Shown here one piece after another: positions 24,101 to 34,282 of a stretch of DNA of 64,000 bases. The first letter of the stretch is position 1; each line of letters begins with the position of its first letter. This DNA comes from Trichoplax adhaerens (lineage: Eukaryota; Animalia; Placozoa). The notes beneath the pieces were generated by a model. It was not told the origin of the DNA and made no database searches. It worked only from the letters and a program-made list of their open reading frames with translations. A program made the position numbers and the translations under genes. Location: the NCBI RefSeq assembly GCF_000150275.1, contig NW_002060960.1, positions 1 to 64,000 of the forward strand, given 5' to 3'.

Positions 24101-26419
24101 TAGACAGACACTAGATCTAGCACTATATCACATCCTTATTAGTAAACCAAATTGTCAATATCTCGAAATTGTATAACAGGCTGATATTCTGTAAGTAACA
24201 TGATTTGAATCTTAAATTTACTCTGTAAAGGATCAGAAATATTTGTTGACGATCGGTAATAATCTTTACTGTAAATAGTATTACTGCATCGAAGTATTTT
24301 AAATTAATTATTAATTATTTGACGGTATCCTAAAGGAGTCATTAGTAGCCATACCATTTCAAGATACAACATTATGTTTATATGTATTTACAGATTATAG
24401 AATAACAGAAAGAAGATAACTTGTAATTACTGCCCCATATCAAAACGGCATAAAATTAACATCAAGTACTTAAGAAAGATAAATCGATTGATTTAAAATA
24501 ATGAGTTGACTAGACAGAGAATATACGAACCTTAATGTTAATACTATCATTGATTGGATAGATTGTATGAAATATTTCAATTACATTACTTATTAATTAG
24601 TTTTGAATTTATTGCAGCAATTATTGCATGACATGAAGATTTGATCAATTTTATAAATTTAATTTTAATATCTCTTAAATTAAATTTAACCAAAGTAACA
24701 TTCAGTCGGTAATGTATTGTACTTGTCTATTTATAAGCATATCATCATCAGCCTATTTTGGAGTAGAATTCTTGTTACCATACTAAAGATAGCTTTAATG
24801 AAAAAATTTGAATACATTATAATTATAATTTTTACGCAAATTTGAATGCATTGATGGATATTTCATACCATACTAATAATAAATTAGATTAAGGTAGATA
24901 TGATTTTGTACATGTACTAATTCAAGTTTTTTGGGAATTGTTTAAGATACTATGGCTTAGCCTTTAGACAATTTTACGTGAAATGAGAAATGTACTTATA
25001 CGCAAAGGCTATAAACAATGAGCTACAGTTGGCAGTTGGGATAACTTCAAGACAATTCAGTTCTAGAAAATTTAGATAGGCATATTACTGAACACTACTA
25101 TTAGAATTTATTGACTAATTGCTTACATTTAGCCTAATTACTATTAATATTACTTCTCCCTGTAACCTAAAAATCTATTTATATAAAATAGTCTCCACTG
25201 CCATAATTTAAAACTTGCAAATTCATTTAGGGGTGTAATGATGAACAACTCAATTTAGTTGTATTAATTTAATTATTACTGATGAGACAAAATTAGATTT
25301 ATTAAAATTAATATTCTGGCCTGTCATGGCATAATATTATCTAAATTACGATTATTATTTACAAAACCATCCAAGGTCACCCTTTGAATAGATTAGATAG
25401 TGATAACATTATTCGATTAATTTAGTAATAGAAAATTTCATATTAAAATTATTGCATCAAAGCTTACATCTTACCGGTTTAATTATCTATCAGTATAGAA
25501 ATGCATCTTTAAGTTTTACATTTAATACGGCGATTCTCATTAGAAATACTAAACTTTCATTAAAATGCATTGCATAATATACCTCAACTTTACTATATCG
25601 TCCGGCCGCCTACACATTCTGTTTCGGGGAAAAGCTGCCAATATCAATGCAAGATTTAATTAATATTCAATATTAAGACGGTTTGTGATTTAGTATCTTG
25701 TACCGCCTCTCTTTGACTTGATAATACCAAATAGCACATCCGTAAATGAAAACTATCTACACAAAGTTTTGATCCTTTAACGTTATATAGTCTGCCTTAA
25801 TTTACTAACGACCATAAACTTCAGATTATTTGCAATATTCACCTTTTACATAAAATGATAGGTATAATGTAGGTATTCTCTCAGTATTATCTCCCAAATT
25901 CACTAGCAAGAGAATTTCTGATATTCCCCATATTCACATTAATAACATATCGTACCTAGCAAGAGTTTATATTTGTTTACTTGCATTTTATTACAAACTG
26001 CATTGATACATAGATATTTACAATAGATTGATCGCTTTACTGTCAATATCAATCTTTAGCAGCCGCGCTTTTCTATTTGTTTGCACTAGCAGCTGCTAGA
26101 GAGCATTTCTCATAATCAATTTCGAAGCCGTAGCAATTCCTAATACATCAGCAAAATATTCACTGCTCAAAGTCTGTTTCTAGCAGTAGGTACGTTGCTA
26201 TTCAACTACTGTTGCTATGCTAAAGCTAAAGGACACAGCATCGATAGGTCAGTTAACGATACTTTTAAAATAAAAAAAATGTGGTATATAAAACCCTTTC
26301 CAAAGGAGAATACTTTTAGCAAACGACCACCAAAGATGATGATTAAATACTATGTGATGCCTGACATGAGCTTGCATTATAGTCTATCAACTGTCGTCTG
26401 TTGACTGTATAACCAATTT

Positions 26420-27938
26420 TTATATAACATGATGATCAGTATCACATTTGATGCAGCAGCCATCTTGTAACATACCACACAAAATAGCTGCTAAGTTTTC
26501 GGCGCGCTGGAAACCATGAAGAAAACGGCCCTCATACGCTATCTGAAATTTATGTAACATGTCTGAAATAGTTGGAAAACGATGATAACCATAACATTTC
26601 CGGAAAATAATAGGCAAATCTATCCAATGTTCAATCCATAGAGGTATTGCTACTTTTTCCCTTCTACATTGCGTCAAAAATAGCTCGATCGTACCCTTAC
26701 ATCTATAATAGTAGCATAAATTGAAAATCAGCTTAAAAGCTGCCTTTTACTATTGACTATTTTCTGAGTATTTATATTTTAGTGTTTCCAAATGCTTTAC
26801 GGATATATTAGATGCATGGATAATCGTAGCCATATTAAAAGCTATTTATACATGCCAAATAGCGCATGCAGTATAAACAAAGACTGGACTTACGAACTGG
26901 TGACCATTGAGAAATTATTTCTATTACTGGTAGCGTTGCATAGCCAATTGAGAAAAAGATGATGTACTGTTGCAAAGTCACTAGCTTTATCGACCACTGC
27001 CTTAGTAGTTAAGCGGTTAAATCAGTTCTAAAGCTATAAATTATCCTATACTTTTGATAATCATCACAAGGTAGTTGTACTATAAATGTTGATATGATAA
27101 ATCAGATATGCTACATAATGCTTTCATTAAATAATATCAGCCGCTACCAATAAAGGTAGCAAATTAGCAATTGAGTGCATAACTGAACATTTACTAACAT
27201 CCATGGATCGATGCTCTGATTTCAATGACTGGCTTACAAAATAAACATTTCATTTTAACGACTGTAAGCTAAGTTATTGCATTCAAAAACTGTATAACTG
27301 TGTAATAATTACACAGCAGCGATACTGTAAATAATCTTTTCTATTACATTATCTAGCATAATCTTGTTCTTTTACAGCAGTATCCCTATAGCCTTGGATT
27401 TATCTAAAAGGAAAGCTTATGCTTCCTAGGCATCATGAAATTAAACTTGTCTATAGATTAAGATCAGTTTGCTATAGATTACTTCTTTTTGCATAATCTA
27501 TGACGATCAGAAATTACGTAATGAGGGCTGTTAATCTGAATAGAATAGTACGTATACGAAATAATCTCGCTTACAACGAAGGATTAAGATTAATACGTTT
27601 AAAATGATAGTATTTCCATGTCAAATTAAATGCAGTATTAAGTGTTTATCTTGTTATTAATAGTATTAAGTTACTACCTGTACAACTCCTGTTGTCTCCT
27701 GGCAGTATTCGCTCAAAATTGGATAGATTCTAGGGCGACAATAGGCGTGAAATTCTTCCTCTTTTAAGCAATTACGGCTATTTATTAAAATTGCTGAGTA
27801 TTCAATCACTTCAGGTATAAATGTAGGCGGCTGCTGAGGTAAGCATGATCCTTCAAGGTAAAAGATCACGTAGCAATCAAATTGATTGGTAGATTTAATT
27901 CCGTTCTTGGCTCTTAAACGTGCAGATCTCTCCGACAT
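26420..27938 (-). CDS. ERI1-family (ERI1/2/3-like) DEDDh exonuclease-fold protein, predicted catalytically dead, 216 aa
   Basis: Exons 27938-27678, 27000-26894 and 26702-26420 with GT-AG introns and an open frame. Family motifs EVIEY, EFHAYCRP.I.P.LSEYC...TG, QC......P.W...WIDL, YEGR..HG...A.N.A.IL..MLQDG are present. ExoI D>Y, ExoII D>G, ExoIII H>L and D>R. Confidence 0.85.
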
Positions 27939-28379
27939 TGTTGCGATCCTACAAATAAAAATTATCATTGATGTAAAGACGGAATAAAAGATAATGTAAT
28001 TTATGGACGGATTAAATATGATCAGATAACTTGTGCTATGATAATACGTAGAGTAGTAAAGCTGCTAATGAAGTTTTTTTCATTTATTGCGATACAATAC
28101 TAATTTCTGACCTAAATTTCATCAGCAGATGATAGATGATCTAGAAATGAAATCATCAATGAACGTTCTGTTCTTTATAAACAGCAGACGTAACCGCGTA
28201 AGCCTAGACCGATTAGTTTCCTTGCCATAAAAGCTATCGAGTATTTGTCGTCATCAATGCAACGCCGTCAACTATGAAATTGTTCGAAATGGTCATTTTA
28301 TATGTACAGGCTGATGCCAGAGTTGATATGAATAAACTGATACTTATCGTGATTTTTTAAATCGATCATTAAGCTTCAT

Positions 28380-31677: not shown

Positions 31678-34282
31678 TTAGATCGAAGTATCACTATTAG
31701 GGGTAATTTCATAGCCGTCCAAAATTAGTTGACATAACACATTAGCAATATTTTGAACATCATCTTTTCCACGATGCCATTGACCCTTAAAAATCTATCA
31801 TCAAATGTTCCAGCATCACCGGTAATCTTGGTTGATAATGGAGGTTAAAAATACGTTTGAAAGCTAGTTTTAAGTCGATCCACTCGCAAGTCCACGAAGG
31901 AAACGGAACGTCACTCAATGCACACTACCGCTTTAAGTAATATTTAACATCAGTAGGAGTGCACGTTACGTAGCCATATGGTGATTTCATATAAGAAAAT
32001 AAAACAGAAATGGGATTATTAAATTTTTAGCCCTTGCTTAAACGTTTGGCATATTACTATTAACAAAGAATACTATCAAAAATGCTCTTCATCTTACCCA
32101 TCCGTTACTAAAATAAAGCTCTTGTTTTCCTTCACAGTATTGTCGTTCAACCAAGCTTCGAAATCGTTAAAAATGTCAGGAAAAGTATCTGCACAACTGA
32201 CCAATTCCTACTCACATACGATTGGTTATTTACAAATTATAAGGATTAACGAACATTAAACAGATTCTAATTGATATCCGAGACTATCGCTATGCAGTAG
32301 CCAGGCACCAAACAGTTGTTCAGTAACAATAGTAATCGATCAGCTTCTTAAATACTTTACGAATCATATTGTATTGGAATGTTGGTGATTCATTTTAATT
32401 TAGTATACAATTATAAGGTAGGCAAACATAGCTTAAATTGATTCTTAGGTAAGTAATACGATCACTTGTGCATTAAAATACCGTACGCAGCAAATTTTCT
32501 CTTCTTGAATTTCATATAAGTATTCGCTTATGAAAGTTGGCCGAAAATAAATTTGGCATCTTATTAATCAATTAATTCCAGTACAATAAATACTTTTGCT
32601 TCAAACCATGCTCTAATTTTTATAATTGATTTTGCTTCAGGCAGAATTGAGATCATTATTTCGTGTTAATGTTCACTCATTGAGTTTGTCAACAAATAAA
32701 TTAGCATTTTTGCAATCAAGCAATACCATCATACTATATCATAAGGAAAACTGTAGTGTCAAACCGTCCCATAAATTTTTAAAACTAATTTAGCTTGAAA
32801 GTAGGATTAAGATCTTATTTCGAATAATGTTCGTATATGAAGCAGGAAAATTAAAAATGAATTGACATCACTTCAATAAATTAATATCTTTATAATAATT
32901 GATTTTGTTTGGTGCTGTACTGTAGACTTTTGATTTTATAATTAATTTAATTTTTTTACTTTAAAGTAGAGCTGAGACCTTATTTTTGAATTAATGTTCA
33001 CTCATAGAATGGGTATCAAAATAAATTAGTACAAGCAATCAACCCATTCAGTCAAAATTTTGACTTCAAACCTTATTACACAATCATACCGTATATTTAT
33101 AGTAAGAAAATTGTAATGCTTGGAGCTAAATTTAACAGCATGTCTTGACTACATTGTCTACACAACAAATAATTAAATATAACTAAACATAGCGTCATGG
33201 CTTTTTCCATAAAATTATTCCGGTACTGGACCAAGTGCCATTGTTATCTCACCAATATTAATATTTTAGGTGTCATAATGAGCCTGTAAGTAAAAGGGAA
33301 CGAGCTCATACTTTTACGATAGAAACTAGTTTTGAATTTAGTCGACTTATAGATTGTAATTATTGGATAGATATTATGTATTAGTATGACGTAACGCTAG
33401 CTAAACTAAATTGATTTTTCACACTTGCATTTTTATTACCTTTGCAGATAACACAAGCTGCTATAAGACTTTGTGAATATGTGAAAATGGAAAAATTAAA
33501 ATAATATTTGGAGGATTTGAAATCCCCAATAGTCCTTAGTTCATTCGTTTATGTTAAGTGACATCTATAGAGATAGCTAATTTATAATAATCACGAATCA
33601 CAGGCCTGCTATCAGCATCAGATTTGATAACTAAATTATAACAAAATATGCATAATTTTATATCGACAGAATGTTATTCAGCTGTAGGCTTGTATATCAT
33701 TGCTGTATTGGATAATATTAGATGATATTAGTAAGAAGGAAGACGAGGAGACTATACGATTATTACTATGGAGCTGCTTGCGCTTTGCTACTCCTACTTT
33801 ACAGTAGATTACCATGATGAAAATTACTTGTAGATGATTCTATTGATTGAGACGAGTTGTATAATCAAGAAGAAAATAAACTTTTAGTGTGTTTAGCTCG
33901 TATGGAGCAGTTAGTCATTAAAGCATTGCCTACTTGCCTGAGATATTCCAGTCAGTCGCTTACAGAATTTACTTAAAGTTCGATTGATCGTAGGTCGAAC
34001 ATACGAATGAAATTCGCTGAAAACTTCTAGCGTGCTAGCGTCAATTAGTAAGGCTGGGAATTCAATAATTTCTGGTAAATGGTAGTCTCGATACTTTGAT
34101 TTGGTTGTAGCTTCAAAATCGATGACAAGATAAAAATCTACAAACGATTCCAGTTTTGGTGGACAGCTTTGGTCTGTTGGATATCTTCGATATATTGGAC
34201 AATTTCCATGTGTTACATGACTTTGATATGTTGGATGGCTTCGGTGTCTTCGATGTCGTCTTCTCCCTCTAGAATTTCTCAT
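31678..34282 (-). pseudogene. ERI1-family DEDDh 3'-5' exoribonuclease, disrupted in its last exon
   Basis: Exon 34282-33938 (YLVIDFEAT, EIIEFPA, EFHSYVRP; GC donor), exon 32207-32098 (..FILVTDG), exon 31958-31678 (PTDVKYYLKR*C...WIDLK...IDF/KGQWHRGKDDVQNIA...DG). Lesions: acceptor CAC instead of CAG (31959-31961), in-frame TAG at 31925-31927, +1 T frameshift at 31789-31793. Confidence 0.85.

What the first reader, a model, noticed from the sequence alone, without database searches (positions are those of the whole stretch)
26420..27938. Intact ERI1-family pseudo-nuclease: open 3-exon ORF with 4 of 5 DEDDh catalytic residues replaced
Seen: the exons splice into a clean 216-aa ORF that aligns without gaps at the motifs to the neighbouring paralog. 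ExoI YVIFYLE vs YLVIDFE (D>Y, E kept), ExoII TSSCKG vs TDGPTD (D>G), ExoIII GRFLHGFQR vs GQWHRGKDD (H>L, D>R). Structural motifs (EFH.Y.RP, LS..C...TG, QC, WIDL, MLQDG) are retained and the protein is Cys/His rich (C-terminal GCCIKCDTDHH). Known: ERI1-family enzymes trim histone mRNA, 5.8S rRNA and siRNAs, and dead or re-purposed DEDD folds act as RNA-binding factors (Exuperantia, Maelstrom, EXD1). Inference: loss of catalysis with a preserved fold and frame suggests selection for a non-catalytic RNA-binding or decoy role, a possibly undescribed RNA regulator.
Basis: partly seen in the sequence, partly recalled or inferred. Interest (0 to 1): 0.85.

Follow-up and report, generated by a model that had tools for sequence, protein, structure and literature searches.

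The report
Expressed catalytically dead ERI1-like gene, Trichoplax
Trichoplax carries a transcribed, correctly spliced copy of an ERI1-type RNA exonuclease that keeps the enzyme's fold but has lost four of its five catalytic residues, so it is probably a non-cutting binding protein: a modest new example of a known kind of dead enzyme.

Summary
On the minus strand, exons 27938-27678, 27000-26894 and 26702-26420 join into a 216-aa ORF. RNA contigs from three studies show both predicted junctions, plus an unnoticed 5' exon (joint 27948|28112) that adds an in-frame upstream ATG.

The protein is letter-for-letter identical to a Trichoplax sp. H2 record named "3'-5' exoribonuclease 1". The T. adhaerens public model TRIADDRAFT_4552 is a chimera of the neighbour's first exon with this gene's exons 2 and 3.

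Alignments to solved ERI1, ERI2 and ERI3 and to 28 relatives confirm D>Y27, E29 kept, D>G126, H>L184 and D>R189. The predicted fold is confident (pLDDT 91) and lies on human ERI1 at 1.5 A.

The gene sits on a branch 3.6 times the median length, only 34% identical to its nearest paralog. In neutral simulations no ORF stayed open at that divergence (0 of 2000). This argues for selection on a non-catalytic protein.

No orthologue turned up outside Trichoplax, so dN/dS could not be measured. RNA binding or a decoy role remains inference.

The "active" neighbour is intact in H2 and broken three times in H1.

Verdict: a real, lineage-restricted DEDDh pseudo-exonuclease. It is a new member of a known kind, of moderate interest.

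The parts
28112..28138 (-). Known 3' part of a 5' exon (transcription start unknown). It holds an in-frame ATG that would add MKFRIAT before MSERS, with a TAG stop six codons further upstream.
   Evidence: An X4 contig joins 28111/28112 to 27947/27948 with GT..AG ends.
27949..28111 (-). 5' intron (163 nt, GT..AG)
   Evidence: Joint 'skips 163, CT..AC (cut +1)' in X4.
27678..27948 (-). It carries the degenerate ExoI motif IFYLEGSC (D>Y27, E29 kept) and the retained EVIEY, EFHAYCRP and LSEYCQETTG motifs.
   Evidence: RNA contigs X6 (27677-27933), X8 (27677-27843) and X4 (27732-27947) cover it.
27001..27677 (-). Intron (677 nt, GT..AG, phase 0 after Q87). It holds 5 H1/H2 substitutions.
   Evidence: Joint seen in X6 and X8. 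Substitutions. The intron position is shared with two paralogs.
26894..27000 (-). Coding exon 2. It ends in TSS, where the family has TDG.
   Evidence: An X6 contig spans it with both junctions.
26703..26893 (-). Intron (191 nt, GT..AG, phase 2 in the codon aligned with the G of TDG)
   Evidence: Joint 'skips 191' in X6. Position and phase are shared with the paralogs.
26420..26702 (-). Coding exon 3 with the TAA stop. ExoII is CKG in place of PWD (D>G126) and ExoIII is GRFLHGFQR (H>L184, D>R189). QC, WIDL and MLQDGC are retained.
   Evidence: RNA contigs X6 and X8 cover it.
26125..26419 (-). 3' UTR, at least to 26125
   Evidence: X8 contig 26125-26660 and X6 contig 26283-26549.
31690..34200 (-). 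Context: the neighbouring paralog, which keeps all DEDDh motifs. It is intact in Trichoplax sp. H2. In this genome it is broken three times: acceptor AG lost at 31959, TAG at 31927-31925, and a +1 frameshift near 31788. It is still transcribed, using a cryptic acceptor at 31931.

Best explanation
This is a real protein-coding gene of Trichoplax (Placozoa). It is a fast-evolving duplicate of the placozoan ERI1/3'hExo-type DEDDh exonuclease, made by DNA-level duplication because the intron positions are kept.

The protein keeps the RNase T/ERI1 fold. It has lost both ExoII/ExoIII aspartates, one ExoI aspartate and the general-base histidine. It therefore cannot hold the two catalytic metal ions and is almost certainly not a 3'-5' exonuclease.

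It is kept by selection as a non-catalytic protein. The most likely way of working is binding without cutting. It would occupy RNA 3' ends or stem-loop substrates of the ERI1-type pathways, or a protein partner of those pathways, as a protector, competitor or adaptor.

Shown: gene structure, transcription and splicing, residue replacements, predicted fold, long branch, restriction to Trichoplax in available data.
Inferred from family knowledge: loss of catalysis.
Inferred from ORF survival and the conservation pattern: selection.
Speculative: RNA binding or a decoy role.
For: Transcription and splicing:
- One X6 contig carries both coding junctions.
- X8, a declared RNA-Seq library from another study, carries the 27000|27678 junction.
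- X4 carries the 5' intron joint. All joints have GT..AG ends.
- The genome holds only one copy of these exons, so the spliced contigs come from RNA.

Family and fold:
- Pfam RNase_T is above its cut-off.
- phmmer against PDB finds ERI2, ERI1 and ERI3 at 1e-10 to 1e-7 per exon.
- The AF2 model has pLDDT 91.1 and pTM 0.86.
- Foldseek against 1w0h gives TM 0.83/0.90 and rmsd 1.5 A.
- The Atlas's own predicted model of this protein has pTM 0.83.

Dead site:
- Four of the five DEDDh columns, invariant in 28 of 28 relatives, are replaced.
- No acidic or histidine residue restores the motif by a one-residue shift.

Selection:
- The gene is only 34% identical to its nearest paralog, on an end branch of 3.31 against a median of 0.92.
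- Under substitution-only neutral simulation, 2.2% of ORFs are still open at 80% amino-acid identity, 0.1% at 60%, and 0 of 2000 at 50% or below.
- It keeps 30 of 48 strongly conserved family columns. These include the structural ones C32, E43, E46, P69, C79, T83, G84, Q87, W106, C135, P143, W149, G181, G186, N192 and G204.
- The non-conservative changes cluster in ExoI, II and III.
- H1 versus H2: 0 of 651 coding differences against a 0.62% background and 5 of 677 in intron 1.
- Meanwhile the catalytically complete neighbour took three disabling hits in H1.

Origin:
- Intron positions and phases are shared with the neighbour and with the canonical copy on contig C1407.
- The three Trichoplax copies group together at UFboot 85 / SH-aLRT 88.
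Against: - There is no orthologue beyond the H1/H2 pair, so there is no dN/dS.
- The zero H1/H2 coding differences are weak evidence (P about 0.017). The whole stretch 25807-27188, non-coding parts included, also has none.
- Contig depth of the transcript is low (about 2-7, against about 35 for the neighbour).
- AF2 with an alignment of active relatives tends to return the family fold.
- Domain charge is ordinary, and no RNA-binding evidence exists.
- The focal row keeps fewer conserved columns (62%) than most control rows (81-94% for four of the five; the gap-padded C1413 row 71%). This also fits relaxed constraint.
- Placement on the tree is unsure because of the long branch.
Confidence: 0.55

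Rival explanations
1. It is an expressed but dying gene. A duplicate lost catalysis, is no longer under selection for its protein, and has by luck not yet acquired a stop or frameshift.
For: The branch is very long, and only 30 of 48 conserved columns are kept. Contig depth is low. Gene death does happen in this cluster, as the neighbour in H1 shows. No orthologue was found outside Trichoplax.
Against: Replacing 4 of 5 invariant catalytic residues by drift implies divergence at which no simulated ORF stayed open, even with indels ignored (0 of 2000). All three coding exons, four splice sites and the frame are intact and in use. Structural invariants are kept while active-site motifs are replaced. 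There are no coding differences between H1 and H2.
Confidence: 0.13
2. It is a non-catalytic subunit or regulator that works through protein-protein contacts, for example with the active ERI1-like paralogs or their partners, rather than through RNA.
For: The fold is kept and the active site is dead. The domain is not basic. It sits next to a paralog. Some DEDDh relatives such as CRN-4, TREX1/2 and RNase T work as dimers (general knowledge).
Against: ERI1 itself acts as a monomer on the histone stem-loop (general knowledge of PDB 1zbh and 4l8r). The neighbour is dispensable in H1 while this gene is unchanged. No interaction was tested.
Confidence: 0.2
3. It is still a nuclease, using an alternative active-site geometry built from E29, H185 (shifted by one position), E129 and perhaps the new Cys residues.
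For: E29 is kept. A His lies one residue after the canonical position, and E129 lies one helical turn after the lost ExoII Asp. The domain has 12 Cys.
Against: From established DEDDh enzymology (RNase T, the epsilon subunit, ERI1), single changes of any of the five residues abolish activity, and here four are gone. R189 and Q188 replace the DD pair. No comparable active variant was seen among the relatives found.
Confidence: 0.06
4. It is a non-coding or mis-annotated transcript, and the ORF is incidental.
For: The public T. adhaerens model for this locus is a chimera. Expression appears low.
Against: A random 216-codon frame of intron-like composition is open with probability about 1.5e-8. 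All three exons show clear homology to ERI1-3, and the intron phases are conserved.
Confidence: 0.03

Closest known systems
ERI1 / 3'hExo, with ERI2, ERI3 and CRN-4: the ERI branch of the DEDDh (RNase T, PF00929) exonucleases
   Same: It is homologous over the whole nuclease domain. It has the same fold (TM 0.83/0.90 to 1w0h) and shares the ERI-type motifs EIIEFP-like, QC, W(I)xL and MLxDGC. Its intron positions match those of the canonical Trichoplax ERI1-like gene on contig C1407, which has a SAP-like N-terminus and an intact DEDDh set.
   Different: Four of its five catalytic residues are replaced (Y27, G126, L184, R189). It has no SAP domain or other N-terminal extension: only about 20-27 residues precede ExoI. 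Its branch is very long, and it is known only from Trichoplax H1 and H2.
Exuperantia, the RNA-binding pseudonuclease of Drosophila (Lazzaretti et al. 2016, cited in PMC5785220 and PMC13659232), and the Exo-like domain of Egalitarian
   Same: These have a DEDD-type exonuclease fold whose catalytic residues are missing or unnecessary, and the fold is used for RNA binding in mRNA localisation.
   Different: They arose independently from other DEDD branches and are multi-domain proteins. For them RNA binding has been shown. Here it has not.
PML PXL domain (PMC13659232)
   Same: It is a DEDDh-type fold that lacks the catalytic residues, has no nuclease activity in vitro, and binds nucleic acids. 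It is a vertebrate example of the same evolutionary route.
   Different: It is related to TREX1/PML-like exonucleases, not to ERI1. It is one domain of a large protein. Its ligand preference (G-rich, polyUG) is known.
ESRP1 N-terminal exonuclease-like domain (PDB 7wrn)
   Same: It is the next structural match after the ERI1, ERI2, ERI3 and CRN-4 chains (TM 0.73, 16% identity). It is an exonuclease-like domain inside an RNA-binding protein. That it lacks catalytic activity is my recollection, not tested here.
   Different: It is fused to RRM-type domains and widely conserved in animals. It is not an orthologue.

Membership tests
DEDDh exonucleases, ERI1 branch (Pfam RNase_T PF00929) | Sequence match to the RNase_T domain above the curated cut-off | tested here: met
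   P0075, identical to the window's protein, scores 32.3 bits against a cut-off of 24, E 1.8e-7. Exon 1 alone scores only 13.2 bits.
DEDDh exonucleases, ERI1 branch (Pfam RNase_T PF00929) | Fold superposes on solved ERI1, ERI2 and ERI3 nuclease domains | tested here: met
   The AF2 model has pLDDT 91.1. Foldseek: 1w0h TM 0.83/0.90, rmsd 1.5 A; 7n8v TM 0.83/0.84; 7k05 TM 0.81/0.88.
DEDDh exonucleases, ERI1 branch (Pfam RNase_T PF00929) | The five catalytic residues D, E (ExoI), D (ExoII), H, D (ExoIII) | tested here: not met
   Only E29 is kept. Y27, G126, L184 and R189 stand in columns that are invariant in 28 of 28 relatives.
DEDDh exonucleases, ERI1 branch (Pfam RNase_T PF00929) | N-terminal SAP domain (ERI1/3'hExo proper) | tested here: not met
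   Pfam finds only RNase_T, and ExoI starts at residue 27. The canonical Trichoplax copy on C1407 extends N-terminally into a region that aligns with the part of the reference ERI1-like protein just upstream of its nuclease domain, where a SAP domain would lie. I did not scan that copy against Pfam.
DEDDh exonucleases, ERI1 branch (Pfam RNase_T PF00929) | Common descent with the canonical ERI1-type gene of the same genome (shared intron positions and phases) | tested here: met
   A phase-0 intron after the Q of TG(I/V)xQ and a phase-2 intron in the codon aligned with the G of TDG occur in this gene, the neighbour and the C1407 copy. The three group together at 85/88 support.
DEDDh exonucleases, ERI1 branch (Pfam RNase_T PF00929) | 3'-5' exoribonuclease activity | not testable with these tools
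   This needs recombinant protein. Family mutagenesis (general knowledge) predicts it is absent.
DEDD-fold pseudonucleases (Exu, Egl Exo domain, PML PXL, ESRP N-terminal domain): a functional class, not a clade | DEDD fold retained with catalytic residues lost | tested here: met
DEDD-fold pseudonucleases (Exu, Egl Exo domain, PML PXL, ESRP N-terminal domain): a functional class, not a clade | Maintained by selection after loss of catalysis | tested here: inconclusive
   ORF-survival simulation and the conservation pattern favour selection. The H1/H2 comparison is too shallow, and no distant orthologue was available for dN/dS.
DEDD-fold pseudonucleases (Exu, Egl Exo domain, PML PXL, ESRP N-terminal domain): a functional class, not a clade | Binds nucleic acid without cleaving it | not testable with these tools
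   The only proxy is charge: pI 6.4, net -2, which is unremarkable.

The most novel reading that the evidence does not exclude
A placozoan-specific pseudo-exonuclease under selection binds ERI1-type substrates without trimming them. These would be histone mRNA stem-loops, the 5.8S rRNA 3' end, or small-RNA duplexes. It would act as a protector or competitor that tunes RNA 3'-end processing or small-RNA pathways in one of the simplest animals. It would have become more indispensable than its catalytically complete neighbour, which Trichoplax adhaerens H1 has just lost.
Probability: 0.25. Interest if true: 0.55.

Novelty: new member of a known kind. Interest (0 to 1): 0.35.

Why it matters
Dead enzymes reused as binders are a recurrent source of regulators. 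Examples on this fold are Exu, the PML PXL domain and the ESRP N-terminal domain. This would be an independently arisen case directly within the ERI1 branch, in an early-branching animal whose RNA-silencing and histone-mRNA machinery is little studied.

There are also practical points:
- The Trichoplax sp. H2 record is named as an active exoribonuclease purely by homology.
- The T. adhaerens record TRIADDRAFT_4552 is a chimera of two genes. It makes the protein look as if it had an intact ExoI motif.
- Both records would mislead comparative counts of ERI-type nucleases.
- The H1/H2 contrast, with the active neighbour freshly broken and the dead copy unchanged, offers a natural experiment on which copy is needed.

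Tried and rejected
Orthologue hunts, all blank beyond Trichoplax H1/H2:
- Exhaustive HMMER of exon 3 against 1.84 billion representatives. One hit fell below 1e-10, the gene's own model, and the rest were canonical ERI relatives at 1e-8 or weaker.
- Word-indexed searches with P0001 residues 72-189, with P0075, and with exon 1.
- JGI metagenome contigs.
These blanks do not show absence from other placozoans, whose genomes may not be in these collections.

Other steps that led nowhere or were left out:
- A metagenome scaffold (L009) carries an orthologue of the neighbour's last exon (GQWH signature). It shows no copy of this gene in the 3.7 kb downstream. In Trichoplax the gene would start at about that distance, so this is uninformative.
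- H1/H2 divergence (0.62%) is too low for a selection test.
- X5 contigs cover introns and intergenic DNA, so I treated that run as DNA-like and did not use it as expression evidence.
- Three long repeat proteins among the hits (P0006, P0007, P0043) are false positives.
- The idea that TAA/TAG might be sense codons (a ciliate-type code) was dropped once the organism and the H2 comparison were in hand.
- I found no paper holding both 'Trichoplax' and 'ERI1'.

Handling of the joined model. Exons were searched one by one by reference. Whole-protein steps used the database record P0075, which a local script showed to be identical to the window's spliced model. The joined model was assembled from coordinates only inside local scripts.

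Full report
**What is in the sequence**

The window is AT-rich eukaryotic DNA, about 32% G+C. On the minus strand between 27938 and 26420 three open stretches join through canonical GT..AG introns:
- exon 1, 27938-27678 (87 codons);
- exon 2, 27000-26894;
- exon 3, 26702-26420 (including TAA).

I sent each exon to the search tools separately, by reference. Whole-protein steps used the database record P0075, which a local script showed to be letter-for-letter identical to the window's spliced model.

**Organism and public records**

- The genome is 105.6 Mb in 1414 contigs.
- Exon 3 finds XP_002116859.1, TRIADDRAFT_4552 of Trichoplax adhaerens (P0001, 189 aa, partial).
- That model is a chimera. 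Its first 71 residues are exon 1 of the neighbouring paralog (window about 33935-34150). The rest is exons 2-3 of this gene, joined through a different donor and acceptor, which explains its single A-M-V versus A-V-V difference.
- Trichoplax sp. H2 has a 216-aa record named "3'-5' exoribonuclease 1" (P0075, GCA_003344405.1).

**Transcription and splicing**

- One X6 contig of 527 nt lies on 27677-27933, 26894-26999 and 26561-26702. It therefore carries both coding junctions with GT..AG ends.
- An X8 contig, from a declared RNA-Seq library of another study and another organism label, carries the 27000|27678 junction.
- A longer X8 contig covers 26125-26660, which gives the 3' UTR.
- An X4 contig joins 27948 to 28112.
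- In the joined form an in-frame ATG lies seven codons upstream (MKFRIAT-MSERS...), preceded by a TAG. The protein may therefore be 223 aa.
- The exons occur once in the genome, so intron-less contigs must come from RNA.
- No contig supports the chimeric public model.
- Depth is low, and contigs cannot rank expression.

**Family and fold**

- P0075 matches Pfam RNase_T above its cut-off.
- Single exons match solved ERI2, ERI1 and ERI3 chains at 1e-10 to 1e-6.
- An AlphaFold2 model built on 35 aligned relatives has pLDDT 91.1 and pTM 0.86. Only the N-terminal 20 residues and the last few are uncertain.
- Foldseek ranks human ERI1 first (1w0h: TM 0.83/0.90, rmsd 1.5 A). ERI2, ERI3 and CRN-4 follow, then the exonuclease-like N-terminal domain of ESRP1, then TREX and DnaQ.
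- The ESM Atlas holds the same sequence with a confident model of its own, and its nearest clusters are all RNase_T.

**The active site**

| Motif | Family consensus | This gene | Change |
|---|---|---|---|
| ExoI | (V/I)DFEATC | IFYLEGSC | D>Y27, E29 kept |
| ExoII | TDGPWD | TSSCKG | D>G126 |
| ExoIII | GRxHSGxDD | GRFLHGFQR | H>L184, D>R189; also S>H185 and D>Q188 |

- The four replaced catalytic columns are invariant in all 28 relatives compared.
- Among the true relatives found with exon 3, only this gene lacks the ExoIII H and D. Three other motif-less hits are repeat-protein false positives.
- From established DEDDh enzymology, each of the five residues is needed for the two-metal mechanism. 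Loss of four makes canonical activity very unlikely. That step is inference, not assay.

**Origin**

The genome has three other ERI-type loci:
- a canonical copy on contig C1407 with an intact DEDDh set, which extends N-terminally into a region that aligns with the part of a reference ERI1-like protein upstream of its nuclease domain, where a SAP domain would lie (a second small contig carries the same sequence);
- a multi-exon copy on C1413;
- the neighbour in this window.

This gene, the neighbour and the C1407 copy share both intron positions and phases, so they arose by DNA duplication, not retroposition. In a maximum-likelihood tree the three Trichoplax copies fall together (UFboot 85, SH-aLRT 88). 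The focal-neighbour pairing itself is weak (78/19). The focal end branch is 3.31 changes per site against a median of 0.92, and its best identity to anything is 34%. Long-branch effects make the exact placement unsure.

**Is it under selection?**

No orthologue beyond H1/H2 could be found, so I could not measure dN/dS. The indirect evidence is as follows.
1. An open 216-codon frame of intron-like composition has probability about 1.5e-8. In substitution-only neutral simulations from an intact frame, 2.2% of ORFs remain open at 80% amino-acid identity, 0.1% at 60%, and none of 2000 at 50% or below. Losing 4 of 5 invariant residues by drift implies divergence of that order.
2. The gene keeps 30 of 48 strongly conserved family columns, including the buried or structural ones. 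Its non-conservative changes cluster in ExoI, II and III. Four of the five control rows keep 81-94%; the gap-padded C1413 row keeps 71%. Constraint is therefore altered and partly relaxed, but not absent.
3. Between H1 and H2 (0.62% divergence over 21 kb) the CDS has 0 of 651 differences and intron 1 has 5 of 677. This is weak evidence, because the non-coding flank down to 25807 is also unchanged.

**The neighbour**

- In H2 it is intact: an AG acceptor gives TDG|PTD, the codon in KRQC is CAG, and there is no frameshift (model P0012).
- In H1 the acceptor is lost (31959), CAG became TAG (31927), and a one-base insertion shifts the frame near 31788.
- H1 RNA still covers it at higher contig depth and uses a cryptic acceptor at 31931, which runs into a stop after four codons.
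- X8 carries the H2-type letters at 31959 and 31927.
- The "role reversal" noted elsewhere in this scan is therefore true of H1 only, and recent.

**Mechanism**

My best reading is a selected pseudo-exonuclease that works by binding. RNA 3' ends or stem-loops of the ERI1-type pathways are most likely, and a protein partner is the main alternative. Nothing here tests binding. The domain's charge is ordinary (pI 6.4, net -2). The extra cysteines (12 against a typical 6) are unexplained, and the CC..C..HH tail is predicted disordered. Known parallels are Exuperantia, the Egalitarian Exo domain, and the recently described PML PXL pseudo-exonuclease. I found no paper holding both 'Trichoplax' and 'ERI1'.

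**Verdict**

This is a new, lineage-restricted member of the known class of DEDD-fold pseudonucleases. It is already in databases under a misleading enzyme name in H2 and a chimeric model in H1. Interest is moderate.

Noticed in passing
window 31690-34200 (minus strand): The catalytically complete neighbouring ERI paralog is intact in Trichoplax sp. H2. In this genome it carries three disabling changes: acceptor AG lost at 31959, CAG>TAG at 31927, and +1 base near 31788. It is still transcribed, using a cryptic acceptor at 31931 that gives a stop after four codons. Six of its H1/H2 differences fall in the 270-nt last exon, about 3.6 times the background rate.
   Followed up: partly
window 26894-27000, 26420-26702 and about 33935-34150: The public T. 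adhaerens model TRIADDRAFT_4552 (XP_002116859.1, partial) fuses exon 1 of the neighbour to exons 2-3 of this gene. No RNA contig supports that junction. The H2 model is the correct one.
   Followed up: yes
window 27949-28138: There is a previously unmodelled 5' exon and a 163-nt intron upstream of the annotated ATG. The joined mRNA has an in-frame ATG seven codons upstream. The transcription start is unknown.
   Followed up: partly
L009:579-896 (ENA metagenome scaffold, ERZ23499115): A 4.6-kb metagenome scaffold encodes an intact orthologue of the neighbour's last exon. It shares the unusual GQWH..DD form of ExoIII at about 50% identity. This suggests DNA of another placozoan-like animal in that sample.
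   Followed up: no
window about 31069: Trichoplax sp. H2 has 526 extra bases here, between the neighbour's 3' end and this gene's 5' exon. This is either an insertion in H2 or a deletion in H1. I did not examine its content.
   Followed up: no
G000:C1407:1043217-1044552 and G000:C1055:409-636: The canonical ERI1-like gene appears on a large contig and again, with an identical exon-1 translation, on a 2-kb contig. The second copy is probably an unplaced haplotype or an assembly duplicate.
   Followed up: no
window 26125-26419: The X8 contig (organism label B) differs from the window at 26208, 26245 and 26361 in the 3' UTR, where the H2 assembly is identical to H1. X8 therefore represents a third haplotype or lineage. 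It shows no difference in the 241 coding bases it covers in exon 3.
   Followed up: no
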